The notes under the pieces were generated by a model. It saw only the letters and a list, made by a program, of their open reading frames with translations, did not search any database and was not told the DNA's origin. Below, piece by piece: positions 3,507 to 53,455 of a stretch of DNA of 64,000 nucleotides. The stretch is from positions 161,357,803-161,421,802 of the forward strand of contig NC_068983.1 in the NCBI RefSeq assembly GCF_001194135.2, in the 5' to 3' direction. A program made the translations under genes and the position numbers. This DNA is from Octopus bimaculoides. Lineage: Eukaryota. Numbering within the stretch: position 1 is the stretch's first letter; each line of letters opens with the position of its first letter.

Positions 3507-3607
3507 TACACATCATGCCTATATGTATCTCACTCTCTATCGCTCTCTCTCACATATAGACTCATTATACACACACATGTATATATATATGTATACTTGT
3601 ATGTATG

Positions 3608-3661
<54 letters not shown>

Positions 3662-3887
3662 TAAAGGGCAGGGAATCGTCAATTAATAATAAAATTAATA
3701 ATTAACAATTTTGCCGGGTAGCTCAGTATGAAAAAACCTTATCGGTAAAACCATTTATAATCATAAATTAGAGAAAAATTTGTAGTTTTGGAATCAGTAG
3801 TTCTTTGGCTGCTATTTCTGAATTCTCAGTATGTTGGAGAAGCAGGATACTGCTAATCCCTATATATTTATGATTTTATATATATAT

Positions 3888-4473
3888 NNNNNNNNNNNNN
3901 NNNNNNNNNNNNNNNNNNNNNNNNNNNNNNNNNNNNNNNNNNNNNNNNNNNNNNNNNNNNNNNNNNNNNNNNNNNNNNNNNNNNNNNNNNNNNNNNNNNN
4001 NNNNNNNNNNNNNNNNNNNNNNNNNNNNNNNNNNNNNNNNNNNNNNNNNNNNNNNNNNNNNNNNNNNNNNNNNNNNNNNNNNNNNNNNNNNNNNNNNNNN
4101 NNNNNNNNNNNNNNNNNNNNNNNNNNNNNNNNNNNNNNNNNNNNNNNNNNNNNNNNNNNNNNNNNNNNNNNNNNNNNNNNNNNNNNNNNNNNNNNNNNNN
4201 NNNNNNNNNNNNNNNNNNNNNNNNNNNNNNNNNNNNNNNNNNNNNNNNNNNNNNNNNNNNNNNNNNNNNNNNNNNNNNNNNNNNNNNNNNNNNNNNNNNN
4301 NNNNNNNNNNNNNNNNNNNNNNNNNNNNNNNNNNNNNNNNNNNNNNNNNNNNNNNNNNNNNNNNNNNNNNNNNNNNNNNNNNNNNNNNNNNNNNNNNNNN
4401 NNNNNNNNNNNNNNNNNNNNNNNNNNNNNNNNNNNNNNNNNNNNNNNNNNNNNNNNNNNNNNNNNNNNNNNNN
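3888..4473. other. Assembly gap (other large gaps: 17442-17649, 48757-49068, 50296-50413)
   Basis: Runs of N. Confidence 1.
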
Positions 4474-4560
4474 TTAAGAGTGGGAGGTGGGGCATTTAAG
4501 AGTGGGAGGTGGGGCATTTAAGAGTGGGAGGTGGGGCATTTAAGAGTGAGAGGTGGCTTT
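4474..4560 (+). repeat. 22-bp G-rich tandem repeat (TTAAGAGTGGGAGGTGGGGCAT), 3 perfect units and 1 degenerate, abutting an N gap
   Basis: Directly visible in the sequence. Confidence 0.95.
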
Positions 4561-6357: not shown

Positions 6358-6405
<48 letters not shown>

Positions 6406-6853
6406 ATGCATGTGCATAAGAGAGAGAGAGAGAGAGAGTATTCATATTGGCAGCTAGTCACTATCAGTTTTCTTTTTATGATTAAGTAGAATGATTAATT
6501 ATGATGAAAATAGATTTTAGATAATTTTTTTAAATAAATAAAGAAGCAACTAAATGACTTTTTAATGTATATTGTTTGTCACCAACACTTTAATCAAATG
6601 CTAACACAATGAATTAATTGAGAATGAGCCAATAAGGGAGCCTCCAAATGGTTAGTTGATCTGCTTGAAATAGCAGCAAAATTTCTTTCAAGTCACACCC
6701 TGTCACTGAAAAATATGATCCTGAGTTCCTTATATATATATAACAGTTGGAACACTTTTGGTCAAAATCTGCTACATCAGGGCTGGTCTAAAGTCAAACA
6801 GCAACTGAGAATATTAATGATAGTTAAAAACAAAAAATTCAATAGTAACTCAC

Positions 6854-6974
6854 ATTTCATTTTGCTAAAATCCAATGATGTTTCTCTAATACTAAAATCA
6901 GCCTGGAATGGTGCAATCTGTTCTCGTAGAATCAGTAAATGTTTTATCATAAACATCTGACCATCTAGTAAGGT
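6854..6974 (-). CDS. COG3: COG3 exon 17 (121 nt; [23 protein letters not shown]...FSKMK)
   Basis: Acceptor tttcgttttttaaag (AAG type), donor T|GTGAGT, phase 0/1. Confidence 0.93.
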
Positions 6975-35100: not shown

Positions 35101-38100
35101 TTATAAATCATCTGGATGTTTAGTTTTCGTTCAATATTCCCAATAGTAATTTTTCTACTAATATACTCTCCATTCATTTACAATGTTAATTTCAATCAAT
35201 CTGTACAGTGGAATCTTTCAGTTATTTAGCTCTCTTCTAATACAGATATTCCCAAACTTTCAAAAAAAAAAAAGAAAAATTATTTGGTTTAATTTTTAAT
35301 CATTTCACAGAAGTCAAAACAACTTATAGACATACTTGTTGGGCATTTTCAATTTTCTCTTCTAGTTCTGAAACTTTAGGTGAAATTATAGAACCTGGTA
35401 ACTGTGTTGCCTGGTCATCTCTGGCAGAGAGGTGAGCGGTTGGGACATCATCTAGAGGCAGCTGTAACAAAATTTCATAGATATTTACTTATTTGAATGC
35501 TTAAGGCTCCAGCTTAGCTGGAGCACTGCTAGAAAAAAAATATGAATATAAATTTTAATAAGAGATTATGAGTAAACAACAAGCAAATAATTCCTAAGAT
35601 CTTGTTATATCTTGGGAGGGTCTTTACACCAATAATAATAAACATGCACTGGTTCAATTTCACTTCTTTATTGTTAGTCAGTTGGTTAGCTATTTAACCA
35701 CCCAATTAATTGATCACTTGTTTAATCAGTTGGTTGAACACTCAATCAGTCCTTTCATCACTATTCACAATGTCACCAAAATTATGCCCTCTTTCTTCTA
35801 GGTCTGTTTCAAATCTGCCCGTGAATGAACCCTATGCTTATGTACCAGCAGATAAGTGGTCACTTATATGAGAAGGGAAGTAAGAGAGAAAAAGAAGAGT
35901 ATGTGTGTGTGTGTGTGTGCTTACATGTATGCCTAATTCTCAAAATGTTTATCTTTAATAGGAATATTTGATAGAGCTACTACTATATTTGATAGAGCTA
36001 CTACTCCTACAAGATGGTGAATTGGCTGAATCATTTGAATGTTGGATAGAATGCTGTACAATATTTGTCCCAACTCCCCAAAGTCAACTTTGCCTTTTAT
36101 CTTATCAAGATTCATAATAACATACTAATTCAGTAACTGTTAGGGGATCAGGTAAGATACCTAGTGGCATCTGTTCTTGCTCTTTGCTTTCTATAAGAAT
36201 ATCTGTCGTGATAATGGCACCAAGCTATATTGGCTAAAGTTGGCACCCTTTCCCTTGCATAAACATTGATGATATGAAGAGAGGATGCTTGCATGCATAG
36301 ATAACTGCTAGTCTTTACAACCACCCTTCAAAAAACACTTATCAAGACCTGCACATAAATGTGCAGACATATGGTCATCATTGACTAAGGAGGCTCAATT
36401 ACTCCTGTGATAAGAAGTAAATTCATTGATAATGAATGAAGCTGCAAGTATAAAGGTAGATTAATAGTGACAAATGTACTTAATAAGAGTATACAGTGTA
36501 TAAAATAAATTACTTCAAGTAATTTAATAAAAATATATATTAAATATTTATTTGATGCTTAATTGATTTTTAAAATGATAAAAAGTTAACTGCTTCAGCT
36601 TCTTGCTAATTCACACAACCATCCTTGAAGCATGGTAATATAGTGTCAAAAAGAGGAGCCAGTATATTGTACTGCAAACCCACCAATATGTACCAGGTTG
36701 GAAAAACAAGTGTGTGTGTGTGTGGTTCAAATCTTAAAATGTGTGACTAGACCTTTTATCTTAAATGTGTTATTAAAATTCATAGCAGTAATATATAATG
36801 TAATCAGGGCGTTTGTTTATGAATTTCATGTCAAAAAAGAAAAAAAAAGTCAATTACTTGACTTTCTATTCTGATATCCAGTTATTAGATAAAAAGGATA
36901 AAATTAAGATTTCATGCAGTTTGGTGAGTATTATCAGTGTAAATAAACTCAATAACATCTATGAATTAAAATAGAGTAGATTTCAGGTACAAGGGTTTTG
37001 CTTCCCATTCTGCACCACCAGTAATGTATAGTGGAACTATCAAAAATAAATAGAATATCTCTTTGGTTCCAGTTCCACTGCATCGAATTTCTTCTTAAAC
37101 ATAGCACCAATCTATGTAATGCAACATTCCCAGAAAATTTGGTTTCTATTCCAGGTAGCTGCATGAACAGAGGTATATAGATTTGTGTGCATTTGTCTGA
37201 AATACACAATAGATGCAAGACCAGCAGCGGATTAAAATCCAAGACCCTTGACCTAGTTAAGTCGAAATTTCGCCACTGCTGAGGTAATTCGGTCAGATAT
37301 ACCTGTTACAAAAAATAACAGGTTAACAACCTGCATTATATCTAACATCAATATAGAGAAGATAACAATTGTGGTAGTTCATTAGTCTATACTATACTTT
37401 TCTTTTAAGTATGGATTTTTTTTTTTTTTAAATAGAAGCATCACTGTAATCAAATTAGGGAAGTTCTGTCTGGTTAACGACATCGAAAGTTCAAACTGAA
37501 CATCGACCTCATTAGTCCCAGAAGACCTATAATAGTTATAGGCATCGTCCCTCTTTCTGGAGTTAATTCGTTTTAAACCAATCGTTATAATATAACCACA
37601 AATCTTAAAAGATTTGTATTTCTTAGATGACAATTACACAGTATCTCAGAAACTTTAAAAAACAACAACATGCACGCTGTGCTCTAGTGTAAAACGAGCT
37701 TACGAGGGAGGTTTTATGTGATCGTTCGACTGGCTATATAAATAACTACCGAAACTCCTCAAGGTCTGTCTTAATAAAGGTAGGATGGTCGTGAGTGGAA
37801 CGCCTTTGCTCATAGGTCGACTTACTCAAAATTGGCCTGAGACGAACAACATGTGTAAATATTGGTTTCGAATTTTGGCACAAGGCTAGCAATTTCGTGG
37901 ATGGAAGTAAGTCACTTACATCGACCCCAATACTCAGCTAGAACTTATTTTATCGACGCCAAAAGAATAAAAGGCATGTCAACCTCGGTGGAACTTGAAC
38001 TCAGAATGTTAAGATAGACGACATGCTGCTAACGATTCTGCCAGCTCGCCGCCTTAAAACCTATTTACGTATTTGCAGGTATACTTCCTGTAATAACAAT

Positions 38101-38668
38101 CGCAACACCCAGAAAAAGTAGAACGAAATAGTAAGGTGGTATTGATGTTATACATGAGGAACGCCTGAACGAGGTGTATAAGGAAGAATAAACTTGTTCA
38201 ATGAAAAATCCACACTGACTTTACAATCATTCACTAAATTTGGTATTTTAACGAGAAATTAAAATTTTATAAAACATAATTTTGATACAATGATCTGAAC
38301 GTTATACGTAAACAAAGTCAGATAAATAGAAATCCTTTATTAAATAGTTAATTTAAATGTCTAAATGAGGTCAGTTTAATTCATCTTAAAATATTCTGAA
38401 TATTTGTCTCAAACTAAACACAGCATCAGTTATATTAAAAAAATTTCCTAGGATATGAAATGTCATTAGTGTTTACATGGCTTTATGAGAGTGACTCTTG
38501 TCCTACCTCCACAGGAAGACGCCTGTGTTGTATCTGACTGGACAGTTCTATAAGTATATCCCTCTGTTTATCTGTCAGGTAGGCTCTGGGCTCAACATTA
38601 GCATCCCACTGACTTAATCGTTCTCTTAATGACTTCTGATCGAGGAACTTTGTCGGCATATCCGCCAT
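6854..38668 (-). CDS. COG3: Conserved oligomeric Golgi complex subunit 3 (Sec34), spliced gene, 3'-partial in this window (17 coding exons traced)
   Basis: The spliced translation matches metazoan COG3 motifs in order: [115 protein letters not shown]. All introns are GT-AG and the phases join without frameshift. Confidence 0.97.
7706..7795 (-). CDS. COG3: COG3 exon 16 (90 nt; [30 protein letters not shown])
   Basis: Acceptor ttctttcag, donor AAG|GTAAAT. Confidence 0.95.
8392..8775 (-). mobile_element. tRNA-derived SINE, near full length (second copy at about 47375-47668 minus)
   Basis: Minus-strand head TGGCCTAGTGGTTAGGGCAG (A box) ... GGTTTCGATTCCCAG (B box); shared body between the two copies. 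Confidence 0.8.
9236..9345 (-). CDS. COG3: COG3 exon 15 (110 nt; [36 protein letters not shown])
   Basis: Acceptor ctattttcag, donor GCA|GTAAGT; highly conserved [17 protein letters not shown] motif. Confidence 0.97.
11190..12340. mobile_element. Decayed RTE-clade LINE with an inverted 5' half (plus-strand RT 11715-12340; minus-strand C-terminus 11190-11710)
   Basis: Plus strand reads [10 protein letters not shown]...KKALDHVW...GVQQGCLLS; minus strand reads [15 protein letters not shown]...[14 protein letters not shown]...[13 protein letters not shown] younger 3'-tail insertion sits at 11768-11821. Confidence 0.75.
12503..12668 (-). CDS. COG3: COG3 exon 14 (166 nt; [21 protein letters not shown]...GPST), low-complexity linker
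   Basis: Acceptor attttgcag, donor G|GTATTC, phase 0/1 compatible with exon 15. The donor choice is inferred from phase and consensus. Confidence 0.82.
14830..14990 (-). CDS. COG3: COG3 exon 13 (161 nt; QELKAFE...DVQERLVYR...PEKLEMME)
   Basis: Acceptor ttgttgtag, donor GAG|GTAAAG, phase 1/0. Confidence 0.96.
16954..16987 (-). CDS. COG3: COG3 exon 12, micro-exon (34 nt; [11 protein letters not shown])
   Basis: Acceptor ttttatttatag, donor C|GTAAGT, phase 0/1; matches NEVLEDHVQNN and restores the frame between exons 11 and 13. Confidence 0.88.
18460..18565 (-). CDS. COG3: COG3 exon 11 (106 nt; [20 protein letters not shown]...CAILK)
   Basis: Acceptor ttttgtag, donor AAA|GTTAGT, phase 2/0. 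Confidence 0.96.
19450..19541 (-). CDS. COG3: COG3 exon 10 (92 nt; [19 protein letters not shown]...SPLL)
   Basis: Acceptor ctccaacag, donor GA|GTAAGT, phase 0/2. Confidence 0.96.
20674..20800 (-). CDS. COG3: COG3 exon 9 (127 nt; [12 protein letters not shown]...RDHCAL)
   Basis: Acceptor gctgtag, donor TTG|GTATGT, phase 2/0; QRELLLGPS and RDHCAL motifs. Confidence 0.96.
22624..23216. repeat. Direct duplication of about 155 bp (22624-22779 and 22989-23141) plus an inverted copy of about 75 bp (23141-23216); MITE-like
   Basis: AATTAAACCTTGGGAGAGGCATTAT...CTGGTTCAGTCCTTTATTAATTTATAAA occurs twice forward and once reversed. Confidence 0.9.
23369..23487 (-). CDS. COG3: COG3 exon 8 (119 nt; [18 protein letters not shown]...NKSV)
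   Basis: Acceptor ctgttctag, donor GA|GTTAGT, phase 0/2. Confidence 0.95.
24290..24465. mobile_element. Small fold-back MITE-like element with GGACAATT(A/C)CCC subrepeats
   Basis: GGACAATTCCCTCTGACAATTACCCC on the left versus GGGGATAATTGTCAGAGGG...TATTGTCC on the right. Confidence 0.5.
24563..25110. repeat. Unclassified interspersed repeat embedded in (TAA)n
   Basis: A more GC-balanced block bounded by (ATT)n at 24488-24562 and TTTATTATTATTAC at about 25110; no coding similarity recognised. Confidence 0.4.
25282..25800 (+). mobile_element. Tx1/L1-like LINE 3' end with (ATT)n tail
   Basis: IWWTR...KRKMRVERE...[23 protein letters not shown] resembles Tx1-type ORF2 C-termini; AATAAA is followed by (ATT)n. 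Confidence 0.55.
25905..26497 (+). mobile_element. Short retroposed copy of the RTE LINE 3'UTR, ending CCAACCCATGCTAGCATGGAAAGCGGACGTTAAAC(GAT)n
   Basis: Same 3' end as the LINE at 29677-31750. Other approximate copies: 2555-2930(+), 5494-5920(-), 11768-11821(+), 16125-16296(+), 18938-18982(+), 19978-20061(+), 34100-34227(+); older ones at 119-372(-), 12765-12950(-), 16590-16805(-), 26880-27062(+), 28445-28580(-). Confidence 0.88.
26534..26662 (-). CDS. COG3: COG3 exon 7 (129 nt; [21 protein letters not shown]...VLPKK)
   Basis: Acceptor ctttccag, donor AAG|GTGAGC; FKQCLS motif. Confidence 0.95.
27340..27820 (-). mobile_element. R4/Dong-like RLE non-LTR retrotransposon 3' fragment flanked by (TAA)n
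   Basis: Minus-strand reading [18 protein letters not shown]...[18 protein letters not shown]...[17 protein letters not shown]; (TTA)n at about 27295-27334 and 27827-27866. Confidence 0.85.
27890..28440 (-). mobile_element. RTE-clade LINE C-terminal fragment
   Basis: [10 protein letters not shown]...KWYGHVLRR...GRPRKRW. Confidence 0.85.
28865..28957 (-). CDS. COG3: COG3 exon 6 (93 nt; [31 protein letters not shown])
   Basis: Acceptor ttcttttcag, donor AAT|GTGAGT; matches KLNSP...MLAKLDDCITYI. Confidence 0.95.
29677..31750 (+). mobile_element. 5'-truncated RTE-clade LINE (RT, PHD-like insert, C-terminus, 3'UTR, (GAT)n tail), inactivated; in COG3 intron 5
   Basis: RT motifs [34 protein letters not shown] and a degenerate YVDN (for YADD); C-terminal WYGHV...RGRPRKTW. 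In-frame stops are present. It ends ...CCAACCCATGCCAGCATGGAAAACGGACGTTAAACGATGATGATGATGA. Confidence 0.92.
31795..31869 (-). CDS. COG3: COG3 exon 5 (75 nt; [25 protein letters not shown])
   Basis: Acceptor tttcatttcag, donor AGT|GTAAGA; KLSYFNELE motif. Confidence 0.95.
32170..32420 (+). mobile_element. SINE of a third family (GCTGTG.GGTAAG..GCTTGCTT...GAAACTGA..GAAGCCC, ending in (TG)/(CA) microsatellite)
   Basis: Related approximate copies at 9680-9850(-), 13650-13815(-), 13890-14290(+), 58075-58275(+). Confidence 0.65.
33083..33248 (-). CDS. COG3: COG3 exon 4 (166 nt; RNYIRELE...[11 protein letters not shown])
   Basis: Acceptor tttcag, donor CAG|GTAAAG, phase 2/0; [16 protein letters not shown] motif. 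Confidence 0.95.
33457..33726. repeat. Long palindrome / fold-back element (about 120-130 bp arms, 21-nt loop) in COG3 intron 3
   Basis: 33457-33585 is the near-perfect reverse complement of 33607-33726, apart from one 9-nt indel and a few transitions. Confidence 0.95.
34029..34161. repeat. Perfect 60-bp inverted repeat with a 13-nt loop, at the 5' end of a retroposed tail copy
   Basis: 34029-34088 is the exact reverse complement of 34102-34161. Confidence 0.95.
34707..34768 (-). CDS. COG3: COG3 exon 3 (62 nt; [20 protein letters not shown])
   Basis: Acceptor aattttag, donor AG|GTATGT, phase 0/2; FFSWFA motif. Confidence 0.93.
35336..35461 (-). CDS. COG3: COG3 exon 2 (126 nt; LPLDD...EEKIENAQQ)
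   Basis: Acceptor ttgttacag, donor CAA|GTATGT, phase 0/0; matches LPIED...ERIETAQQ. Confidence 0.9.
38507..38668 (-). CDS. COG3: COG3 exon 1 (162 nt; MADMPTKF...RRLPVE)
   Basis: ATG at 38668, donor GAG|[14 protein letters not shown]...LTDKQ resembles the COG3 N-terminus (REKLALWD...LTDRQ). Confidence 0.92.
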
Positions 38669-38672
38669 TTTG
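38661..38672 (-). promoter_or_regulatory. YY1-type motif (CAAAATGGCGGA) overlapping the COG3 start codon
   Basis: Plus strand reads TCCGCCATTTTG, matching the YY1 consensus AAAATGGCGG; the ATG is the COG3 initiator. Confidence 0.45.
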
Positions 38673-41600
38673 ACATTTTTATAAACTGATCGCCCCAGCT
38701 TCGCATGCCACGTCGATTACGGTGTCAATTATAAAGTATACGCTGATGAATTAATATCCTGGATTATCAGCACTACTGCTTTTATGATCGTATTTGTCAA
38801 TCCCTGCGTTAGAAAAGCTATGTTCAAAACAATATTACCTAATAATAATTACATTTTAAAGCTAGACTTTTAAGAAAAGTTATAAAAATATATTAAAAGA
38901 ATAATCCTAGTTTTAAAAAGATGCTCAGGAATTAAAATTTTGCTAACATATTCCGATCTCTATAAATTATCTAAATTGTTGAATACGTTAGTATTTCCTA
39001 CACCCCTACTTTCTTTCTGAGTTAGCTTTATGTTTGTCAATTACACTAGTTTTACCTAGTGTTACTTTGGTAAACAATAACTTTTGTAACATTTATCGGG
39101 TCGTCCATATGGAGGAAAGAGCACGAAGCATTGGCAGTTGTAAATTTTGCTTTGATAAATGACATTCATGTGACTATGTTTCTACCTCAAGCGTTTCATT
39201 TGGATAGTATTAAGAGATTTGAAACAAATGCTGTAACATTTTAGAAGGGGTTTTTCAATAGTATCTTTGAAAAAAAAAATTCTATCCCAAATTTGTTGGT
39301 TAGTGTTGGTCCATTGAAGTAAATGATGGTAACCATCATCATTTTAACACCAACTTTCCATACCTACATTGGCCGGATGAAGTTTACTCAAGCAGATTTT
39401 TCTATGGCCCTTCCTGTTACTAACCCTTGCTTGTTTCCAAGTAAGGCGATGTTTCCCAATGGCCAAACATGCTTTTGCGAAATACTGGAAATACAGATTT
39501 TATTACTGCAAATAATGTTTTCTATGTTGGTCTTTTAATAAATACTAGCAACAAGAACTACACACTGGGAGAGACATACTTCTGGAGGATCTTTTAAGCC
39601 AAGAGATGAGTAATAGATAAAATTCATATGTGAGTAACTTGATTTGCAGAATGTCATATTAAACAAGTTGAAGGGTTTACTGATGCTAAGGGCGACAGAC
39701 AATGCATTTGCTGACATTCTCCAGAGTAGAAGGTGTGATGGAGAAGGATAAGTTTTTATATGGTCTGATAACCCGGAAAGTGAACTGGTCAGAGCAGAAG
39801 AGGTGAGGAAAGGTGTTTCAAGGCAGTGACTTTTTATGACTGTCTCCATTATTTTCAAGATGGCAGAATTGAAGGTGATGGGTTGATAGCTGGCAAGGTC
39901 CCTAAGGTTGTTGCTGATTTCGAGATGGGATACACTGTAGTGCTTCTAAAATTAGGATGGATATCTGGAAGGTGAGAGAGAGAGAGAGAGAAGTAAATGA
40001 CATTTCAAAGGGGACTAATATTTTACTATGTTGAAGATTTATTAGATTGTTTTCTTTCGACTAAAGTACAAATTAGTTGGAAGTATCTATTGAGTTAACG
40101 TCAATATATTTCTGATATGTATTTTATCGAATCTAAAAGGATGATAAGTCGAACTCGATTAGGATATGCGACATTGAAAAACAATTGTTCACTGCTTTTA
40201 TTTCGCGTGTGTGTGTGTTTCCAACTGTCACACCTCTTTGGCTGTGGTAATGCCTGAAAAATTTCATTCATAAAGTTACTTTCAAAATAAGAATTATCTC
40301 CCTTAGACTACACCCGAAATTAGCAGCCAGTCTCGTCATACTACAGTTTTTAGGAAAGATGCAGAGATTTTCATATGGTAAACGATTATAATGATTGCTA
40401 CGGAAAAAAAACCCAGAAGAAAAAGACGCATGGGATGATGCAGTTATGGTTACACTATGTCATAAAAAATACAGCGATGTCACAGTTGGAACGCTTTTGA
40501 TCACCATACATGTAAACAGAATTTAAAGAAAACCTACATCGACTTCAGTATATGACTGGTATTTACTTTATCGACCCAGAAAGGATGTAAAGCAACGTCG
40601 ACTTCGGCGGTATTTGAACTCAGAACGTACAGATAGACTTAATGCAGTTAAGCATTTTGCACTGCGTGCTAACGATTCTGCTAGTTAGCCGCAACTCCAA
40701 GATAATATCAAATACAATCAACCATTAAACTTAATGAGATGAACATATCACACAAGCATAGATGACAAAAATCCATGTAATTACAACATTCATACCATAC
40801 AATAGTGCAAAGAGCGAAAAAGTAACGAAATGATATACAAATGACCGACTGTAAAACTGTTCAGCAAAGGTGCTACTACATTTGCTGGAGTTCTTGTAAT
40901 CGTGAGGTTAGTTGAAACATCTTTCAACTAACTTCACGAAGAATTTATTTTCTTCTTTGTCTGTTCTAAGTTAAAACCTTGTCCGAGTCGGTATTGCTTT
41001 TCATCATTTTTAGTACCAACAAAATAAATATCAGGCATCTGCCGGGATTGATTTAATCGACTATACAATTCACATACGAATTTTTTTCAGTGGAGTTTGC
41101 TAACACACTGTTTCTATTTAATCCACTTAACGGAATTCAACACATTCATGCTTCTTGACCATTTGGTTTTAATCAGGAATTTTTTTGGCAATAAACTATT
41201 TCAGGGGACATAACTCAATAGAGAACAAATTTAAAATATAACTCTATATTTATTTACAAACCATTTTGAATAAATCTGAAGAAAAGTGAAAACAGAATTA
41301 TTTTCGGTTCAACATTTATTTTAGCAAACTAGCTTGTTAAGAACATGCCTATTAGACACGAAAGCAGTAATTGTTTATCGCCTCCTAAATGTGGGTGTTC
41401 TATAAGAACAGACGTTACTGCTATTTTAACCCCAGGAGGACGCCTCCTCCAGCTGGTTATTTCTTTGATCATACTTGAAATTAATATTTTTCCGTACTGT
41501 ATGCATTTTATGGGTTCAAATGTGCAAATAATGGTTTCTTATATAGGCACGAGGCCAGCAATTAATGACTCCAATACTTGACTGTGATTTTACACCAAAA

Positions 41601-45967: not shown

Positions 45968-46320
45968 AAAACGCATGGCCTAGTGGTTAGAGCATTGGGC
46001 TCACAATCACGGGCCCGGGCTTGTGCTGTGCTGTGTTGTGTTGTGTTGAGTTGTGTTCTTGAGCAAGACACTTTATTTCACGTTGCTCCAGTTCACTGAG
46101 CTGTAGAAATGAGCTGCGACGTCACTGGTGCCAAGCTGTATCGGCCCCTTTGCCTTTCCCTTGGATAACATCAGTGGTATGGAGAGGGGAGGCTGGTATG
46201 CATGGGTGACTGCTGGTCTTCCATAAATAACCTTGCCCAGACTTGTGACACAAAAGAGGACTTTCTAGATGTATCCCATAGTCATTCATGGCCGAAGCGG
46301 GGGTTTTACTCTTTACTGAG
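45968..46320 (+). mobile_element. tRNA-derived SINE, second family (inverted copy at about 5010-5360)
   Basis: Head GCATGGCCTAGTGGTTAGAGC; body GAGCAAGACACTTTATTTCACGTTGCTCCAGTTCA...TAGAAATGAG shared with the 5010-5360 copy. Confidence 0.8.
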
Positions 46321-47724
46321 GTCAATATGAATGACTGCTAGTTGAGATTTTATGTTTATGTAAGAAAACAATAGTTATAACCATTACAGTCTCAGCTCAA
46401 ATCCCGCTAGTATAAGTTTAGCTTTTCATCCTTCTAGGACTAATAAAATAATTAACATATATGTACTGGAATCCATTCAGTCAACAACTTCTCTCTTTGA
46501 GTAAAACTGATAAAAGAAGTCATACAAATGTTAAGATCGAAGTTTTTCATCGATGCTTTGACAATATTTTTGCAGGTCAACCTTGATTAACTTATGATTA
46601 ATTGTGCACAGTCGTGACTGTCCCGTACTGTTCTCAAGTACAGAGCACCCAAAACAATATCATCCAATGAGCTATTTTCTAAGACGTTAGGTTGTGTTAT
46701 GTGAAAGATTAGGCTGCTATTCTTAGCAGGGAAAACGACCACTTAGCGGTTCCCACGTTAGCTCGTAACGATATGTCTTTCGATTCTTACAATGCCTAAA
46801 AATGACAGTTAGATGCGTTCTCGCCTTGTCAGTCAACGCTGTTTTCGTAGCACGAGACCAATTCTTAAATTAAAACGAACAAGGAGAAGCGCTGCGAAAA
46901 TATCATTCAAACCATAACTTAAATAACGAAAATGTGTATTCTATTTCAATAACTTATAACAACTTGATCTGATAACCCAATACAAAAATAACTGTGACAT
47001 TTGAAAAGAAGGTAGGTAAATGGAATTAATGAGTAAAAGATTAAAAGAACTTTTGAAAAGTTATCGCTTCCCTTTTAAAGGAACAAAGATGTAAAAAAAT
47101 TAAGTAAAATTTGGTAAAAAAGAGTTGTAAATTATGTTTCATGAAACACAAGAATACTTTACACACTCACATATATTAAGGGGAACAAATTCTAATTACC
47201 CTCCCTATTTCTTCCTCGCCAGGTTGTGATATCTATTTCAAAACACCGTCAAAGATTATTTAAATTTTCACATTTCATACTTTGTACATTTTCAAACCAT
47301 TATTCTAATTTCCATCATTATTCGCCTTATTTGTAAAATTAATGGATCAATTTTTATTTATTTATGCGCCCTTCTAAAGCCTAGCCAGGCTCATGGGCCC
47401 GGTTTCCCGGTTGCTATGGCGTATGTATTCCCCCCTAGCTGGACAGGACGCCAGTCCATCGTAGCGTTATTCATGAAACAGGAAGAAAGAGTGAGAGAAA
47501 GCTGGGGCGTAAGAGTACAACAGGGGTCACCACCACCCACTGCCAGAGCCTCGTGGAGCTTTAGGTGTTTTCGCTCAATAACCACTCACAATGCCCGGTC
47601 TGGGATTCGAAACTGCGATCCTCCGACCGCGAGTCTGCTGCCCTAACCACTGGGCCATTGCGCTTCCAATGGATCAATTAGAATCCCTAAAATATAAAGC
47701 AGTGTTACGATATCTAAAGTGTTC

Positions 47725-48150
47725 AAAGGCGGCGAGCTGGCAGAAACGTTAGCACGCCGGGCGAAATGCTTAGCGGTATTTCGTCTGCCGCTACGTTCTG
47801 GGTTCAAATTCCGCCGAGGTCGACTTTGCCTTTCATCCTTTCGGGGTCGATTAAATAAGTACCAGTTATGCACTGGAGTCAATATAATCGACTTAATCCG
47901 TTTGTCTGTCCCTCTTTGTCCCCTCTGTGTGTAGCCCCTTGTGGGCAATAACGAAATAAGAAATGGGCGAAATGTTTAGTGGTATTTCGTCTGCTTTTAC
48001 ATTCTGAGTTCAAATTCTGTCGAGGTTGACTTTGCCTTTCATCCTTCGGGGTCGATAAATTAAGTACCTGTTGCGTATTGTGATCGATCTCATCAACTAG
48101 CCCCACTCCCACCCAAAATTTCGGGCCTTGTGTCTAGAGTAGGAATGAAT
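47725..48150 (+). mobile_element. Two tandem copies of an abundant SINE family (GGCGGCGAGCTGGCAGAAACGTTAGC...TTCATCCTTTCGGGGTCGAT)
   Basis: Other approximate copies: 1655-1835(-), 8220-8390(-), 10060-10265(-), 25120-25262(+), 37860-38057(-), 40530-40695(-), 41535-41680(-), 42950-43150(-), 45575-45775(-), 53055-53272(+), 53640-53830(+), 57270-57400(-), 59835-60050(+), 63030-63250(+). Confidence 0.85.
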
Positions 48151-48527
48151 ATTAAAAATGTTCAGTTAGAGTTACACATCTAGCGACACGGATATAGAGA
48201 TAAAGAACAAGACAGCGTTCAGAGTCCCCGCTTGAAATTTAATGGTTACGTGAATTTTTCATTTTTTTTCTTTTTTTTAAGGAAGAAACCGTATTATATT
48301 CAGCTCCCAACCCGTTTTGGTTCTTCGGGCCTCGGACCAATGTACCAGCTGAACCTGTCTCTTATTAACATGAATGTGTAGTGTGTGTATATGCGTGTGC
48401 GTTCGTGTGTGTGTAACATAAGTATATGTATAATCTTTTATACTAAATCAGTGGATCCCAACGTGTGGCCCGAGGACCTCTGGTGGTCTGCAAAGATAGC
48501 ACTGGTGAACTAAATTCAAAATTTCAT

Positions 48528-48582
<55 letters not shown>

Positions 48583-49211
48583 TATTGTGAACTAAATTCA
48601 AAATTTCATATATATATATATATATATCTGTAAAAATATGTGACACTTATTCGCTAGCTATGATAAAACTCGGAGTTTTATCATGGCTACCGAATAAGTG
48701 TCACATATTTTTACAGATAAATTCCTCTATTTACATAATATCGAGGTCTCTTTCTTNNNNNNNNNNNNNNNNNNNNNNNNNNNNNNNNNNNNNNNNNNNN
48801 NNNNNNNNNNNNNNNNNNNNNNNNNNNNNNNNNNNNNNNNNNNNNNNNNNNNNNNNNNNNNNNNNNNNNNNNNNNNNNNNNNNNNNNNNNNNNNNNNNNN
48901 NNNNNNNNNNNNNNNNNNNNNNNNNNNNNNNNNNNNNNNNNNNNNNNNNNNNNNNNNNNNNNNNNNNNNNNNNNNNNNNNNNNNNNNNNNNNNNNNNNNN
49001 NNNNNNNNNNNNNNNNNNNNNNNNNNNNNNNNNNNNNNNNNNNNNNNNNNNNNNNNNNNNNNNNNNNNTATGTGGCCTGCTTGTTTGTTGTACCTTGTTT
49101 ATCATTTTGTCCATGTTCTTTTGCAACGTCATGTACCTAGATATGTATCTATATGTACATGTAGATGAAGGTATGTACATACATGTACATATATATGCAT
49201 ATACTCATATA

Positions 49212-49244
<33 letters not shown>

Positions 49245-50413
49245 CATACATACATACATACATAAGGATAAGCGCATTAAAAGGGGTCCATGGGAAAATT
49301 CATTTAAATAAAAGGGGTCCTTGGTAGTGAAAAGGTTGAGAACGACCGTACTAAACCATAGGCTCATGTCTTTCCCTAAGTATGACCAATCGCTTAGGAG
49401 TGTGAGGACCTGAGTGTGAGGTGAGGCTAAATATTGGGCAACCCTTAGTGAAGCTTACAACCTCTACACAACCTTTGGCCGTCCTTGCTGAAACTTTCAC
49501 TAAGAGAGCGTGCTCCTATTGATATGGTATATCTAGGAGGGCATATCATGAGCAAAAAAAAAAGGGGGCCTTTTTTGCCGAACTGACGGAAAAGGGCAAT
49601 GTTAGTCGGAATGCCTATAAAGTACAGCTCAAGCAATACCTGGAATGACAGCAATCTGTTGAAATTTTGTTGCCTGATTCTGCAGGTTACACTTCATATT
49701 TGCTGCAGAGGATGCCTTCGAGGCCCACACTGCATGAGTCACTTCCTGATAACTCTGGATCTATTCTAATCAAAGCCACACCACTCACATTTTCTTTCCC
49801 GAAGAAAAAAATACACGTAAACGAGGAAGAGCCGTAAATTTTGATAGATACACCAGCACGCGTTTCACTAAGAAACAAGAAAAAAAAAAACTTGGATTTT
49901 TTGCGTGGAATCAAGTACCCTGACCTCCTAATGTGCTGCATTCAACGAAAAAAAAAAAACAAGCATTTTCCAATGATTCCTGGAAAGGGAGGGATGAAAG
50001 TTCCGAGGATTTCACCCCCACCAAATTTGTTTTTCCTGTTTTTTTTTTTATATTAAATCTAACCACCAAACCACTGGAAATCGTTTGATCTTCAGACAAA
50101 TCACACCTTCAAAGTGAGACGAGTGTAATAGTAAGAATTTACCGTTTTCATTATCTTACTCTTTTTATCGAACCGCTAGTGACAGTACATATGAACAACA
50201 GATAGAATATCATGTCTGTTCCAAGATTTCATGCTAGCATAGAAAATTTCTTACAGCTATACAACCGACGAAGAGCGTCAGTACTTTATCGGCTGNNNNN
50301 NNNNNNNNNNNNNNNNNNNNNNNNNNNNNNNNNNNNNNNNNNNNNNNNNNNNNNNNNNNNNNNNNNNNNNNNNNNNNNNNNNNNNNNNNNNNNNNNNNNN
50401 NNNNNNNNNNNNN

Positions 50414-50455
<42 letters not shown>

Positions 50456-51451
50456 AAATTTAATCTCAAAAATGTTCATATACATATGGAAAATTGGGGA
50501 AAATAAAAACGCACTTGATAGGAAATCACGGAGCAAATAAATACTCATTGCATCCAAGAATTATTAAGAAAATCGTATTTAAAAAAAAAAAACGATATGG
50601 AACGGAAATACTAGAAAACAAAACTCCTTCAAATGTTCAAATTGTAAATTGGCTTATCTTTGTAAGTCCGGTTTTGTTAACCAGTGAAGGTTGCATGAAC
50701 CAAAGCAAGCTAATAATGTACTGTCGCCACCTGAAAGAACATATACATCAGCCAATCATGTAAGAAGTGTCGTTTCTATTATTTTTTAGAATAGGCTTCC
50801 CCCTTCTCTCCAGTGCTTTGAAGTGTGTGGTGTAAAAAATTTTTTAATCCAGGTGAAAACGGAGAAACTCCAACTTATGTGAGACAGCTATTTCAAAAAT
50901 CCACCCAGACCACCAATAATAGAAACAACATTTATTACATGATTGGCAGACGTGTATGTTCTTTCAGATGGCGACAGTATATTATTAGCTTCCTTTGGTT
51001 CATGCAACCTTGACTTGTTATCAAAACCGGACTTAAAACGACTAAGTCAAATTACAAAATGAACATTTGAAGGCGTTTCATTTGTATTTTTTGCTTTCTA
51101 TAATACGATTTTCTTTTATCAATTGGACTTTTTTTCAGTTTTCCTCATGAATACGAACATTTTTGAGATTAGATATACACACACTCATACGTATTCAGCC
51201 GACAAAATACACTTTATGGGAGACAGCTATACTGAAAGTCCTGCGGTCGAAAATGACACTGTATGAGTACTGTTTTCAGAGGTGCTCCAACGATATAATA
51301 GTGTTACAGGACTTTCCACCACCACCACCACAATAACAACAACCAACACGAGCCCTACCTCTACAGCTCGACTAATTTATTTATAAAACTACTGGACTCT
51401 TGCTCAAGCCATCATATAATAAATGCATTTTTATTTTTCAGGTTTTTCGCA

Positions 51452-52336
51452 ATGTCTTCGCCAGTCTTGAAACTATTCCAGATTATTATGATACTGTATA
51501 TGGCATTAGGTGGTAATACATTTGTAAGAGAAATTAAACATAATTCGGAAGTTGCAGGAAACATAAAGTCTAACATTAAAAGTACAACTACACCCAGTTC
51601 AAAATTAATGAAACACACAGTAGCTTCTTTAAGGAATCAGACAAATAATATACACAATCTGAGAGTTGATGTCAACTCATCAAAATACCCTGTTTACAAA
51701 ATGACAATGAAACCAACTTTGAAAATGAAACCAGTTTTGAAAATGAAGCCAGCTTTGAAAATGAAAACAGTTTTGAAAATGAAACCAGCTTTGAAAATGA
51801 AACCAGCTTTGAAAATGAAACCAGCTTTGCAAATGAAAACAGTTTTGAAAACGGAAAGAACTTTGAAGGTGAAACCATCACGAAAATATAAAATACTACA
51901 ATCCATCATTGTTAAAAGAGTCACTTTCAAAAATAATTCAGCTAACCAAACCCTAGGAAAAACCAATGGTATTTCTGCTTCGACAGAAAATTCCAGAATT
52001 GGGCAGGTGAAACGGATGTCTTTATTTCCTTCAAGATTATTTAGAAGAATTTCTCATAATCTACAAGGTTCTGGAAGTAAAAATGCTAGTAGTAAACTTG
52101 ATAATGGCTTGGGTGTTCATCTTATTCGAGTGTATCCCCCGATAATGCATGGTTTCCATAGGTTTTTCGTAAGGCGTCGGCCTTTTGCTAATTTTACAGA
52201 CAAAAATGATACTCTTCTTAAAATTGTATTAATTTCTAACGAAACTCCAGCGGTAAACAATTTATTCCAACCATTTCTCGACTTTTTTCGAAGAATGACA
52301 TTGTCCATTAAGTCATTTCTTCACGCCGTGAAATAG
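51452..52336 (+). CDS. Unrecognised 294-aa basic protein with a predicted signal peptide and (L-K-M-K-P/T-A/V) hexapeptide repeats
   Basis: 885-nt uninterrupted ORF in AT-rich DNA. Hydrophobic N-terminus (LFQIIMILYMALG) and 8 N-X-S/T sequons. A polypyrimidine/CAG acceptor-like site lies 10 nt before the ATG, and AATAAA is at 52380-52385. No transposon motifs are visible. Confidence 0.7.
   Translation: MSSPVLKLFQIIMILYMALGGNTFVREIKHNSEVAGNIKSNIKSTTTPSSKLMKHTVASLRNQTNNIHNLRVDVNSSKYPVYKMTMKPTLKMKPVLKMKPALKMKTVLKMKPALKMKPALKMKPALQMKTVLKTERTLKVKPSRKYKILQSIIVKRVTFKNNSANQTLGKTNGISASTENSRIGQVKRMSLFPSRLFRRISHNLQGSGSKNASSKLDNGLGVHLIRVYPPIMHGFHRFFVRRRPFANFTDKNDTLLKIVLISNETPAVNNLFQPFLDFFRRMTLSIKSFLHAVK
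51707..51875 (+). repeat. 18-bp coding minisatellite (consensus TTGAAAATGAAACCAGCT), about 9 degenerate units
   Basis: Directly visible tandem array inside the 294-aa ORF. Confidence 0.95.
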
Positions 52337-52379
52337 ATTTTGCAGTTAATTGCTACCTGACTGTATACAAAGATGTTAA

Positions 52380-52385
52380 AATAAA
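52380..52385 (+). terminator. Polyadenylation signal for the 294-aa ORF
   Basis: AATAAA 44 nt after the stop codon, followed by T-rich sequence. Confidence 0.45.
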
Positions 52386-52552
52386 GACTGATTTATTTCA
52401 TTGATTTAGTTTTATTTTATTGAAAAGTTTAGATTTCTTTTGACATGGCACAAATTCAATTGTTTCCCCAGACCCCAGGGATAGGGAGGGTGCATTACTG
52501 ACACTCTATCAATATATTTTCGTTGATTTCTTAAAAATTACTTATTCAGCTA

Positions 52553-52629
52553 GGACATGTCCCTTTGGACATGTCCCTTTGGACATGTCCCTTTGAACAT
52601 GTCCGTTTATATCCAGCTTGGACATGTCC
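52553..52629. repeat. 14-bp tandem repeat (GGACATGTCCCTTT) containing five RRRCATGYYY palindromic decamers
   Basis: GGACATGTCC at 52553, 52567, 52581 and 52620; GAACATGTCC at 52595. Confidence 0.9.
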
Positions 52630-53455
52630 GTTTTATATCCAGTACACAGCGTCCATTACTGAGAGTATCAGATATGGCATAGATTAGAGGGCCCATTATT
52701 GTCATAAGATACACCTATGCCAATGGAAACAGCCTTTCTCATTCAGAGAGTATTATGACCCTTGACGGCACAGCAATATTTTTACGTATATACCTAGACG
52801 GTCCGACATGGCTATCCACGCCACCGACATTGCACATATTTCTGTTTTTCTTTCAACACCTCGACTCGTTTTCCCTTCATAAACCAGGTGGTCAACACCT
52901 TTCCTGGACGTTCATCTCTCGTGAAAAATACTCCAGAACTCTCTGAGATAAATCAGTAGCGTAGCTAGGGCGATAGGGGTGGCTCACCTCGGGTGACGCT
53001 TTATTAGTCGACGATGAAAATTATTATTATTATTAATAATATTTCGAACTGATTCAGGGCGGTGAGCTGGCAGAATCGTTAGCACGCCGGAAAAAATGCT
53101 TAGCGGCATTTCGTCCGTCCTTACGTTCTGAGTTCAAATCCCATCGAGGTTGACTTTGCTTTTCATCTTTTCGGGGTCGATAAAATAAGTACCAGTTATG
53201 TACTGGGGTTGATGTAATCGACTATCACTCTCCCCAAAATTTCAAGCCTTGTGCCTATATTAGAATGGATTATTTCAAACTGCTTTGCTTCTCACCCCTA
53301 TGATGGAATTTAGGTGGGTTTACTTGACCTCAACCATCCAAGAACTTTCGAATGATCTTCGCTGTTCCTAATAAGCAGGCGAGACGCATGTATTCTATGT
53401 GCTTCTGCAAGCCTGTTTCTTCTATCCACTCTTAGAGCCTCTTCCCCGTCATTCA

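What the first reader, a model, noticed from the sequence alone, without database searches (positions are those of the whole stretch)
51414..52400. Orphan gene candidate: secreted, highly cationic, Cys-free protein with a Lys/Met hexapeptide repeat
Seen directly: an 885-nt ORF with an N-terminal K plus hydrophobic core ending A-L-G (signal-peptide-like). By hand count it has about 55 K+R versus about 10 D+E, and no Cys or Trp. It has 8 N-glycosylation sequons, about 8-10 tandem (L-K-M-K-P/T-A/V) units, and several dibasic or tribasic sites (RK, KR, RR, RRR). The C-terminus looks amphipathic (NLFQPFLDFFRRMTLSIKSFLHAVK). It is flanked by a tttttatttttcag acceptor (or a TATA-like ATATAATAAA at 51414) and AATAAA. 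I recognise no family. It lacks the reflectin motif and the G-K/R amidation sites typical of neuropeptide precursors. Inference: a lineage-specific secreted structural, mucus/egg-coat, adhesive or antimicrobial precursor that may be processed into cationic peptides.
Basis: partly seen in the sequence, partly recalled or inferred. Interest (0 to 1): 0.72.

Follow-up and report, generated by a model that had tools for sequence, protein, structure and literature searches.

The report
Octopod-only secreted polycationic glycoprotein gene
The ORF is a real two-exon gene, found so far only in octopods, that encodes a secreted, sugar-decorated, very positively charged protein made at very high level in one tissue (tissue label hidden; my guess is testis); its function is untested and no paper mentions it.

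Summary

It is a real gene. An in-frame stop precedes the ATG, and AATAAA follows the stop codon.

In run X13 its depth is 2,400-6,900, against about 0 in two sister runs. The neighbouring COG3 gene is equal in all three.

It is not a strict orphan. Positional orthologues lie next to COG3 in Octopus sinensis (LOC118762507, uncharacterised) and Argonauta hians. Between Argonauta and this window only the coding DNA still aligns.

Conserved features:
- signal peptide
- high pI
- no Cys in the mature protein
- several sequons
- a 150-aa C-terminal domain ending in an amphipathic helix

Not conserved: the hexapeptide array and five of the six dibasic or tribasic sites. Processing into peptides is therefore unsupported.

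No Pfam, PDB or wider homologue was found, and AlphaFold gave no confident fold. Between close species it evolves at about the neutral rate.

Best reading: a secreted polyanion-binding glycoprotein, probably testis-enriched. The tissue call is inferred, because run labels are coded.

The parts
46825..47011 (+). Exon 1, non-coding 5' UTR. This is the minimum extent. The X13 contig runs on upstream to 46208, where it meets a repeat.
   Evidence: A 1053-nt X13 RNA contig lies on 46208-47013 and then on 51440-51690. Organism C contigs start at 46825 or 46860 and make the same join. An in-frame TGA lies 27 nt before the ATG in the spliced mRNA.
47012..51441 (+). Intron of 4,430 nt, GT..AG. It holds high-copy SINE-like repeats, two N gaps and a (GT)n run.
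   Evidence: The join is seen in RNA contigs of X13, X16, X17 and X25. Repeat depth reaches 1e4-1e6.
51426..51451 (+). Polypyrimidine tract, AG acceptor and a 10-nt leader (GTTTTTCGCA) before the ATG.
   Evidence: Nearly identical in O. sinensis. Still recognisable in Argonauta hians as ...ttctttagATTTTTCGCAATGTCTTCG.
51442..52400 (+). Exon 2, carrying the whole coding sequence and the 3' UTR. The 3' end is approximate.
   Evidence: RNA contigs run colinear with the genome from 51442 to 52361-52400.
51452..52336 (+). Coding sequence, 294 aa plus stop.
   Evidence: All indels between species are in frame. Divergence from Argonauta by codon position is 0.39 / 0.24 / 0.50.
51452..51514 (+). Signal peptide, residues 1-21 (MSSPVLKLFQIIMILYMALGG). 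The cleavage site is inferred to follow A-L-G.
   Evidence: It is the only hydrophobic segment. It is identical in O. sinensis and homologous in Argonauta, MSSLILQLFFMCLIPYVTLG. No SignalP run was possible.
51515..51697 (+). Polar N-terminal region rich in N, S, T and K, residues 22-82, with two sequons. It evolves fast.
   Evidence: Organisms B and C lack one NIKS unit through a 12-nt in-frame deletion at 51560. Argonauta has a Thr-rich stretch here instead.
51698..51877 (+). Ten tandem hexapeptides, (A/V/T)-L-K-M-K-P, residues 83-142.
   Evidence: TRF gives period 18, 9.8 copies. Units are listed. The O. sinensis genome has 8 units and its RefSeq protein 6. Argonauta has only a short K/P-rich stretch.
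51887..52333 (+). Conserved C-terminal domain, residues 146-294, with five or six sequons.
   Evidence: 93% identical to O. sinensis and 46% to Argonauta, with 66 invariant columns. BLASTP against the Argonauta protein gives E = 9e-41. Window 52076-52335 is one of only two blocks of this gene whose DNA still aligns with Argonauta.
52259..52333 (+). C-terminal cationic amphipathic helix, residues 270-294.
   Evidence: Hydrophobic moment is about 0.6. The hydrophobic positions 1, 2, 4, 5, 8, 12, 15, 16 and 19 are the same in Argonauta. It is a helix in both AlphaFold models, at pLDDT of only about 50.
52380..52385 (+). Poly(A) signal AATAAA.
   Evidence: It lies 44 nt after the stop and is conserved in O. 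sinensis. RNA contigs end at 52361-52400.

Best explanation
This is a single-copy, two-exon gene restricted, as far as annotated proteins show, to octopods.

Shown:
- The mRNA is spliced from a non-coding first exon.
- It is polyadenylated after AATAAA.
- It is very abundant in one sequencing run of this species.

Inferred from conserved sequence features:
- The product enters the secretory pathway through a cleaved signal peptide.
- It is N-glycosylated at several conserved sequons.
- It leaves the cell, or fills a secretory granule, as a Cys-free, largely unstructured polycation with a net charge of about +44.

Inferred mechanism:
- The young Lys-Met-Lys-Pro array supplies multivalent positive charge that sticks to a polyanionic partner. 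Candidates are sulfated or sialylated glycans of a mucus or egg coat, or acidic membranes.
- The conserved C-terminal 150 residues, ending in a cationic amphipathic helix, carry the specific and older function. This may be surface or membrane binding.

Inferred tissue:
- The producing tissue is most likely the testis.
- That would make it a sperm acrosomal or sperm-coating protein acting in the female tract or on the egg coat.
- Near-neutral to fast protein evolution and changing repeat number fit that role.
For: Gene and transcript:
- Spliced RNA contigs are found in two species.
- An in-frame stop lies upstream of the ATG.
- Poly(A) signal and contig ends agree.

Specificity:
- Depth is 2,438-6,882 in X13 against about 0-7 in X23 and X24 of the same study.
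- COG3 mRNA is 86, 55 and 69 in those three runs.
- No other run of that study is listed as holding the gene.

Single copy:
- DNA depth equals that of the flanks.
- There is no paralogue in the window.

Constraint:
- Orthologues lie beside COG3 in O. sinensis and A. hians.
- Only coding DNA still aligns with Argonauta.
- Second codon positions diverge least.
- All indels are in frame.

Secretion and glycosylation:
- The N-terminal hydrophobic segment is conserved.
- Sequons are enriched, P = 0.008.
- All 8 are kept in O. sinensis despite substitutions inside them, and four lie at aligned positions in Argonauta.

Charge: mature pI is 11.5, 11.0 and 10.4 in the three species.

Fast evolution:
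- dN/dS against O. sinensis is 0.86.
- Against organism C there are 8 non-synonymous changes and 1 synonymous.
- Repeat number differs between species.

Testis lead, from coded run ids matched by year, run number and size:
- The organism C runs fit the O. maya studies.
- Four equal small libraries at depth of about 300 fit the 12 equal testis libraries.
- A variable set fits the white-body study, whose male libraries are reported to hold sperm and cilium transcripts.
- From my own memory, not a tool result: the 2015 tissue set of the likely source species includes testes and no white body.
Against: - The tissue labels of X13 and of the organism C runs could not be read. The testis assignment rests on pattern-matching of coded runs, and the alternative pairing (white body high, testis variable) is not excluded.
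- Transcripts also reach depth of about 48 in runs that fit oviducal-gland libraries. That is more than stored sperm would easily explain.
- No signal-peptide predictor was run, and there is no proteomic or glycosylation evidence.
- AlphaFold gave no confident fold. The helix and the 'disordered polycation' picture are therefore weakly based.
- Polyanion binding is inferred from charge alone.
- dN/dS near 1 between close species is equally what relaxed constraint would give.
Confidence: 0.45

Rival explanations
1. It is a host-defence protein of haemocytes or of the white body, the blood-forming organ. Under this reading it is a cationic granule glycoprotein whose amphipathic C-terminal helix and Lys array attack microbial membranes. 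By function it would be comparable with eosinophil cationic granule proteins or large antimicrobial proteins.
For: - Strong positive charge, a conserved cationic amphipathic C-terminal helix and fast evolution.
- If the four equal organism C runs are instead the four white-body libraries (4 runs), the gene is well expressed in the white body of both sexes.
- The weaker signals in other tissues would then be blood cells.
Against: - In organism A the gene is on in one run and at least 300-fold lower in sister runs with equal COG3 depth. No other run of that study holds it. A blood-cell product should show in many vascularised tissues.
- The variable run set (9, 42 and 18 million letters) does not fit the equally pooled testis libraries, as this pairing would need.
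- At 294 aa and glycosylated, it is unlike typical antimicrobial peptides.
- No conserved cleavage site would free the C-terminal helix.
Confidence: 0.18
2. It is a structural or adhesive secretion, such as egg chorion, egg-stalk cement, mucus or sucker lining. The polycation would condense with acidic glycans or proteins (complex coacervation) or be cross-linked through lysines.
For: - Signal peptide, very high expression in one tissue, Lys-rich tandem repeats with regular Pro, conserved glycosylation and no Cys.
- Transcripts are present in runs that fit oviducal-gland libraries.
Against: - The repeat array is missing in Argonauta, while the non-repetitive C-terminal domain is the conserved part. 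This is the reverse of most structural repeat proteins.
- Tyr is scarce (5 residues). Gly is not enriched (11 residues). Asp and Glu are few (10 together). So the usual DOPA or Gly-rich adhesive chemistry is absent.
- The putative oviducal-gland runs show only partial, lower coverage.
Confidence: 0.15
3. It is a precursor that is cut at dibasic sites into several cationic bioactive peptides.
For: There are six dibasic or tribasic sites in this species, and five of them are kept in O. sinensis.
Against: - Only [RK]K at 144-145 is conserved in Argonauta. KR155 is already lost in O. sinensis.
- There are no Gly-Lys/Arg amidation sites.
- Conservation is spread over the whole C-terminal domain rather than in short peptides between sites.
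Confidence: 0.05
4. It is a transcribed but untranslated ORF (a long non-coding RNA), or a decaying gene.
For: - dN/dS is about 0.86 against O. sinensis, with 8 non-synonymous changes to 1 synonymous against organism C.
- Within Octopus the coding DNA is no better conserved than the flanking non-coding DNA.
- The exact protein sequence is not in the 15-billion-protein collection, so the gene appears unannotated in this species.
Against: - The ORF is open in all five taxa compared here, as far as their contigs reach, and every indel is in frame.
- Against Argonauta only the CDS and COG3 exons still align.
- Divergence by codon position follows the coding pattern.
- An ORF this long is not expected by chance: 9e-5 per window.
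Confidence: 0.03

Closest known systems
Uncharacterized protein LOC118762507 (XP_036357028.1), Octopus sinensis
   Same: Positional orthologue next to COG3. It shares the exon-2 layout, the signal peptide, all 8 sequons and the C-terminal domain (93% identical).
   Different: It has fewer hexapeptide units: 8 in the genome and 6 in the RefSeq protein, some changed to LKTEPT. It has one extra residue and one extra sequon in the N-terminal region. No function is assigned.
Hypothetical protein Ahia01_000924100 (GAB1606415.1), Argonauta hians
   Same: Positional orthologue next to COG3. It shares the acceptor, leader and start context, a homologous signal peptide in the genomic ORF, a basic pI of about 10.3, four aligned sequons, and a C-terminal domain 46% identical that ends in the same amphipathic pattern.
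   Different: It has no LKMKP tandem array and a Thr-rich N-terminal region instead. Five of the six dibasic sites are absent. The deposited model is cut short at the N-terminus: 196 aa against a 252-aa genomic ORF.
Abalone sperm lysin / sp18 and other molluscan acrosomal gamete-recognition proteins (comparison from my own knowledge, by function only)
   Same: Made with a signal peptide, strongly basic, abundant in one tissue, and fast-evolving between close species. They act without enzymatic activity on an extracellular coat.
   Different: No sequence similarity was detected. Lysin is a small helical-bundle protein without tandem repeats. Testis expression and positive selection are not shown here.
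Large cationic secretory-granule or antimicrobial proteins with amphipathic helices (by function only; from my own knowledge)
   Same: Secreted, pI above 10, with a cationic amphipathic helix.
   Different: There is no homology and no conserved site to release the helix. The expression pattern is too restricted for a blood-cell product in organism A.
SEA-domain mucins (notothenioid fish mucin-1-like proteins P0003 and P0004)
   Same: Residues 23-76 align at 35% identity with the second half of their repeat unit.
   Different: The low whole-protein E-values come from summing 7-18 near-identical repeats. A single unit gives only E = 2e-4 in a one-to-one comparison. Pfam reports no SEA match. The region is not conserved in Argonauta. 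I treat this as chance or compositional similarity.

Membership tests
SEA-domain mucins | Significant match to the SEA domain profile over its full length of about 120 residues | tested here: not met
   Pfam scan at E <= 10 lists no SEA hit. Only 60 residues align to half a unit, with pairwise E = 2e-4. The region is not conserved in the Argonauta orthologue.
Neuropeptide / prohormone precursors | Conserved dibasic cleavage sites flanking conserved short peptides | tested here: not met
   One of six basic clusters is conserved to Argonauta. Conservation is continuous across the C-terminal domain.
Neuropeptide / prohormone precursors | Gly-Lys/Arg amidation signals | tested here: not met
   The sequence has no G-[KR]-[KR]. 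The only G-K is GKT at 169-171.
Antimicrobial-peptide precursors with a C-terminal cationic amphipathic helix | Cationic amphipathic helix | tested here: met
   Hydrophobic moment is about 0.6 for residues 265-289. The hydrophobic register is conserved in Argonauta. AlphaFold gives a helix, but at low confidence.
Antimicrobial-peptide precursors with a C-terminal cationic amphipathic helix | Conserved processing site that releases the peptide | tested here: not met
   RR280-281 lies inside the helix and is RS in Argonauta. No conserved basic pair precedes residue 270.
Antimicrobial-peptide precursors with a C-terminal cationic amphipathic helix | Antimicrobial or membrane-disrupting activity | not testable with these tools
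   Needs synthetic peptide or recombinant protein assays.
Molluscan acrosomal gamete-recognition proteins (lysin/sp18-like, by function) | Sequence or fold homology to lysin/sp18 | tested here: not met
   No hit in the exhaustive HMMER search, the profile searches or PDB. Models are too poor for a fold search.
Molluscan acrosomal gamete-recognition proteins (lysin/sp18-like, by function) | Testis-specific expression and acrosomal location | tested here: inconclusive
   Expression is confined to one run, but that run's tissue is coded. The testis reading rests on matching run patterns to published O. maya studies.
Molluscan acrosomal gamete-recognition proteins (lysin/sp18-like, by function) | Positive selection (dN/dS > 1) | tested here: inconclusive
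   Overall dN/dS is 0.86. The repeat region gives 4.7, but on 18 changes in an uncertain alignment. Against organism C there are 8 non-synonymous changes to 1 synonymous. This is too few changes for a test.
Sperm nuclear basic proteins (protamine-like / histone H1 family) | Nuclear protein with no signal peptide, an H1 globular domain or an Arg-rich core | tested here: not met
   A conserved N-terminal signal-type segment is present. There is no Pfam H1 or protamine hit. The protein is Lys-rich rather than Arg-rich and carries conserved sequons.
Reflectins | Repeated Met/Asp-rich reflectin motifs with abundant Tyr and Trp | tested here: not met
   Only 5 Asp, 5 Tyr and 0 Trp. No family hit.
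Transposable-element ORF | Multi-copy in the genome, with reverse transcriptase, transposase or integrase domains | tested here: not met
   DNA depth equals that of the single-copy flanks. There are no Pfam domains. Position beside COG3 is conserved in three genomes.

The most novel reading that the evidence does not exclude
The gene is the founding member of an octopod-specific sperm (acrosomal or sperm-coat) protein family, a functional counterpart of abalone lysin or oyster bindin. Its conserved C-terminal domain would engage the egg coat or the female storage organ. Its Lys-Met-Lys-Pro array grows and shrinks between species and would tune binding to acidic glycans, contributing to species-specific fertilisation in octopuses. 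As far as I know, no gamete-recognition molecule has been identified in octopuses.
Probability: 0.2. Interest if true: 0.7.

Novelty: new member of a known kind. Interest (0 to 1): 0.42.

Why it matters
Taxon-restricted, highly expressed secreted proteins are where much lineage-specific biology sits, in reproduction, defence and materials.

This one appears unannotated in the source species: its exact sequence is absent from a 15-billion-protein collection. It is truncated in the Argonauta annotation and nameless in O. sinensis.

The report supplies three things:
- a corrected gene model;
- evidence that the gene dates at least to the Octopus-Argonauta split;
- a separation of its old core (signal peptide, glycosylated C-terminal domain, amphipathic tail) from its young, copy-number-variable Lys array.

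If the producing tissue is the testis, it becomes a concrete candidate for sperm-egg or sperm-female-tract interaction in octopuses. If it is a blood-forming or secretory tissue, it is a candidate defence or material protein. In either case, reading one run label turns it into a directly testable hypothesis.

Tried and rejected
- **Family searches, no result.** Pfam on the full protein gave only a sub-threshold UQCC2 hit at E = 0.23, and nothing on the C-terminal domain.
- **PDB, no result.** A profile search against PDB sequences found nothing.
- **Wider homologues, none.** The exhaustive phmmer search over 1.84 billion representatives gave only the two octopod orthologues as credible relatives. 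The other eight hits are repeat or composition matches: fish SEA mucins, and PE/PK-rich repeats. Two profile searches of the 5.8-billion-protein set added nothing.
- **Structure, unusable.** AlphaFold2 on the full length and on the C-terminal domain gave mean pLDDT 36.6 and 37.9. I therefore ran no fold search.
- **Reading the tissue of the runs.**
  - The word filter of the run search accepts only fixed SRA terms.
  - The O. sinensis locus could not be used as a query for runs.
  - A marker-gene test of X13 was dropped. I had no reliable octopus marker sequence.
- **Literature, no mention.** The gene id, the accession digits and three peptide strings appear in no held paper. They also do not appear in the supplements of an O. 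sinensis gonad study or an octopus immune-cell study. Two other papers had no supplements held. The 2015 octopus genome paper is not held.
- **Rejected ideas.**
  - The ORF as one exon of a longer coding sequence: an in-frame stop lies in exon 1.
  - A TATA promoter at 51414: the spliced leader makes it unnecessary.
  - A paralogue family in the window: none found.
Full report
**1.

The window carries an ATG-to-stop ORF at 51452-52336 on the + strand (885 nt, 294 aa). It is the longest N-free ORF in the 64-kb window. From the window's own stop-codon frequency, about 9e-5 ORFs of this length are expected per window.

The hand counts are exact:
- 37 K + 18 R against 5 D + 5 E
- no Cys and no Trp
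- pI 11.4
- eight N-x-S/T sequons
- basic clusters at 144, 155, 187, 198, 241 and 280

Eight sequons is more than composition predicts. Shuffles give a mean of 3.25, with P = 0.008.

Tandem Repeats Finder reports an 18-bp unit at 51702-51877, 9.8 copies, 84% matches. This encodes ten (A/V/T)-L-K-M-K-P hexapeptides at residues 83-142. Three of the units are identical at the DNA level, so the array is young.

The only strongly hydrophobic stretch is the N-terminus. The C-terminal windows have one of the highest helical hydrophobic moments in the protein, about 0.6.

**2. It is a real, spliced, polyadenylated gene**

A 1,053-nt RNA contig of run X13 (organism A, the species of the window) lies on 46208-47013 and continues on 51440-51690. 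The overlap resolves to a canonical intron, 47012-51441 (GT..AG).

Runs of a closely related species (organism C: X16, X17, X25) show the same join. In that species exon 1 starts near 46825-46860.

In the spliced mRNA an in-frame TGA lies 27 nt before the ATG. Exon 1 is therefore non-coding and the 294-aa ORF is the whole protein.

AATAAA lies 44 nt after the stop codon, and RNA contigs end at 52361-52400.

DNA contig depth over the gene equals that of the single-copy flanks. Four DNA runs of organism A show no variant outside the repeat core. No paralogue lies in the window.

**3. Expression is strong and highly restricted**

| Run (organism A) | Depth on this gene | Depth on COG3 mRNA |
|---|---|---|
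| X13 | 2,438 (5' contig), 6,882 (3' contig) | 86 |
| X23 | about 0-7 | 55 |
| X24 | about 0-7 | 69 |

X23 and X24 come from the same study as X13. COG3 was read on its 2.8-kb mRNA contig in each run. The difference is thus several hundred-fold and is not a matter of library depth. No other run of that study is listed as holding the gene. Two 2023 runs hold it, spliced, at depth 3-5.

**4. It is not a strict orphan**

The only protein hit in the 5.8-billion set is O. sinensis LOC118762507, uncharacterised. The exhaustive HMMER search adds one more true relative, a hypothetical protein of Argonauta hians (E = 4e-36).

Both genes lie just downstream of COG3, on the opposite strand to it, as in the window.

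The Argonauta model (196 aa) is cut short. The genomic ORF is 252 aa and begins MSSLILQLFFMCLIPYVTLG, homologous to MSSPVLKLFQIIMILYMALG here. The acceptor, the 10-nt leader and ATGTCTTCG are conserved too.

Between Argonauta and the window, the only DNA in 20 kb that still aligns is:
- the COG3 exons;
- the start of this gene (51426-51478);
- its C-terminal coding part (52076-52335), which ends at the stop codon.

Divergence by codon position is 0.39 / 0.24 / 0.50. This is strong evidence for long-term purifying selection on a protein.

Two profile searches, Pfam and PDB find nothing further. The exact protein of the window is not in the 15-billion-sequence collection, so the gene appears unannotated in this species.

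**5. What is old and what is young**

Conserved in all three genera:
- the signal peptide;
- a basic mature protein (pI 11.5, 11.0 and 10.4);
- no Cys after the signal peptide, and no Trp;
- sequons at four aligned positions (all eight are kept in O. sinensis, two through T-to-S and F-to-Y changes that preserve the sequon);
- a 150-residue C-terminal domain, 93% and 46% identical, with 66 invariant columns;
- a final 20-residue segment whose hydrophobic positions (1, 2, 4, 5, 8, 12, 15, 16, 19) keep the same register, that of a cationic amphipathic helix.

Not conserved:
- the hexapeptide array, which has 10 units here, 8 in the O. sinensis genome, 6 in its RefSeq protein, and none recognisable in Argonauta;
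- the N-terminal polar region;
- five of the six basic clusters.

This argues against the idea of a precursor cut into peptides.

**6. Rate of evolution**

Against O. sinensis, dS is 0.068 and dN/dS is 0.86 overall. By region it is 0.54 (N-terminal), 0.47 (C-terminal) and 4.7 (array). The array figure rests on few changes in an uncertain alignment.

Organisms B, C and F differ from the window by about 1.2%. There are 8 non-synonymous changes to 1 synonymous, plus an in-frame loss of one NIKS unit.

Within Octopus the coding DNA is no better conserved than the neighbouring non-coding DNA, which is about 88-94% identical across the locus. The protein is therefore under weak or diversifying selection in the short term and clear constraint in the long term. 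That pattern is usual for reproductive and immune proteins. This last comparison is from general knowledge.

**7. Structure**

AlphaFold2 gave mean pLDDT 36.6 for the full length and 37.9 for the C-terminal domain. Helices were predicted at about 193-205 and 270-293, but only at low confidence. I made no fold comparison because the models are not usable.

**8. Which tissue?**

Run names are coded, and the attempts to read them failed. The following is inference.

Organism A has 2015 genome and tissue RNA runs. From my own knowledge it is probably Octopus bimaculoides, whose 2015 set includes testes but no white body.

Organism C has RNA studies in 2018, 2019, 2021, 2022 and 2024. These fit the published O. 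maya series:
- testis: 12 equally pooled MiSeq libraries;
- white body: 4 libraries;
- oviducal gland: 4 libraries, 2021.

Study P8 shows four equal small runs, each with full coverage at depth of about 270-310. That fits the equal testis libraries, since the tool lists at most four runs per study.

Study P9 shows three unequal runs with variable coverage. That fits the white-body set. Its authors report sperm-, axoneme- and cilium-related transcripts found only in the male libraries.

The putative oviducal runs reach depth of about 48.

The opposite pairing (white body high) cannot be excluded. I put testis as the main site at roughly 0.55-0.6.

**9. Mechanism proposed**

Shown: the gene is transcribed, spliced, tissue-restricted, and conserved as a coding sequence.

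Inferred:
- The signal peptide takes the protein into the ER.
- Several conserved sequons are glycosylated.
- The mature protein is a soluble, Cys-free polycation. It has no second hydrophobic segment and no retention or GPI signal.
- The Lys array gives multivalent electrostatic binding to acidic glycans or membranes.
- The conserved C-terminal domain with its amphipathic tail provides the older, specific activity.

If the tissue is testis, the secretory route in spermatids leads to the acrosome or the sperm surface. The partner would then be the egg coat or the acidic secretions of the oviducal gland, where sperm are stored.

**10. Rivals**

- A haemocyte or white-body defence protein. This fits the charge and the helix, but fits the one-run specificity in organism A poorly.
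- A structural or adhesive secretion. This fits the repeats, but the repeats are the non-conserved part.
- A peptide precursor. The cleavage sites are not conserved.
- An untranslated ORF. This is contradicted by the Argonauta comparison.

**11. Comparison with known families**

It belongs to no described family. The only named relatives are two unnamed predictions.

The hits to fish SEA-domain mucins come from summing near-identical repeats. They are not backed by Pfam or by conservation in Argonauta.

By function it resembles molluscan acrosomal recognition proteins or cationic granule proteins. No defining feature of either could be shown here.

**12. Verdict**

This is a sound observation of a genuine, octopod-restricted, uncharacterised secretory gene. 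It is a new member of a familiar kind (taxon-restricted secreted proteins), not a new kind of system. It is moderately interesting. It would become clearly interesting if the producing tissue is the testis and the protein proves to be a gamete-interaction factor.

Noticed in passing
window 52553-52642: Five palindromic decamers (GGACATGTCC or GAACATGTCC) sit in a 14-bp tandem array about 170-250 nt beyond the poly(A) signal. They fit the RRRCATGYYY pattern, which from memory resembles a p53-type half-site. Five of the window's 11 matches lie within these 77 bases. One DNA contig of organism A lacks one 14-nt unit, and the alignment with O. sinensis breaks here.
   Followed up: partly
window 29943-30779 (+): A 278-aa ORF carries reverse-transcriptase motifs (FVDLEKAFD ... 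YVDNLALIA). It is a fragment of a non-LTR retrotransposon.
   Followed up: partly
window 47476-48060, 48446-48640, 49028-49415, 53000-53250: Very high-copy short repeats lie inside the intron and just downstream of the gene. Their depth is 1e4-1e6 in both DNA and RNA contigs. They are transcribed at similar levels in all RNA runs.
   Followed up: no
window 51652-51745: In three 2022-2025 DNA runs of organism A, a second contig carries a piece of about 95 nt that is 93% like this stretch. It is flanked by unrelated sequence, so a stray fragment copy lies elsewhere in the genome. It was not seen in the 2015 run.
   Followed up: no
L001 10001-10852 (O. sinensis): The genome locus encodes 283 aa, but the RefSeq protein has 271 aa. 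Two LKTEPT units are missing. This is either copy-number polymorphism of the array or a difference between the assembly and the transcript-based model.
   Followed up: partly
L002 9833-10591 (Argonauta hians): The deposited gene model (196 aa) starts at an internal Met. The open frame extends 56 codons upstream to a Met followed by a clear signal peptide.
   Followed up: yes
window 51440-51746 against 51800-52400: In several organism C runs the 5' contig is 8-10 times shallower than the 3' contig: 27 against 272, 38 against 310, and 11 against 102. In X25 and X13 the ratio is only 1.4-2.8. The cause could be 3' bias of the libraries or a shorter transcript starting in or after the array. Contigs alone cannot decide this.
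   Followed up: no
window 35336-35461 and 38507-38705 (-): These are the first two exons of COG3 (conserved oligomeric Golgi complex subunit 3), joined in 2.8-kb mRNA contigs of three runs. The 5' end of COG3 lies about 8 kb upstream of exon 1 of the gene studied, on the opposite strand.
   Followed up: partly
window 2081-61339 (nine N runs, e.g. 3888-4473, 48757-49068, 50296-50413): There are assembly gaps, two of them inside the intron of the gene. Intron length and content are therefore approximate.
   Followed up: no
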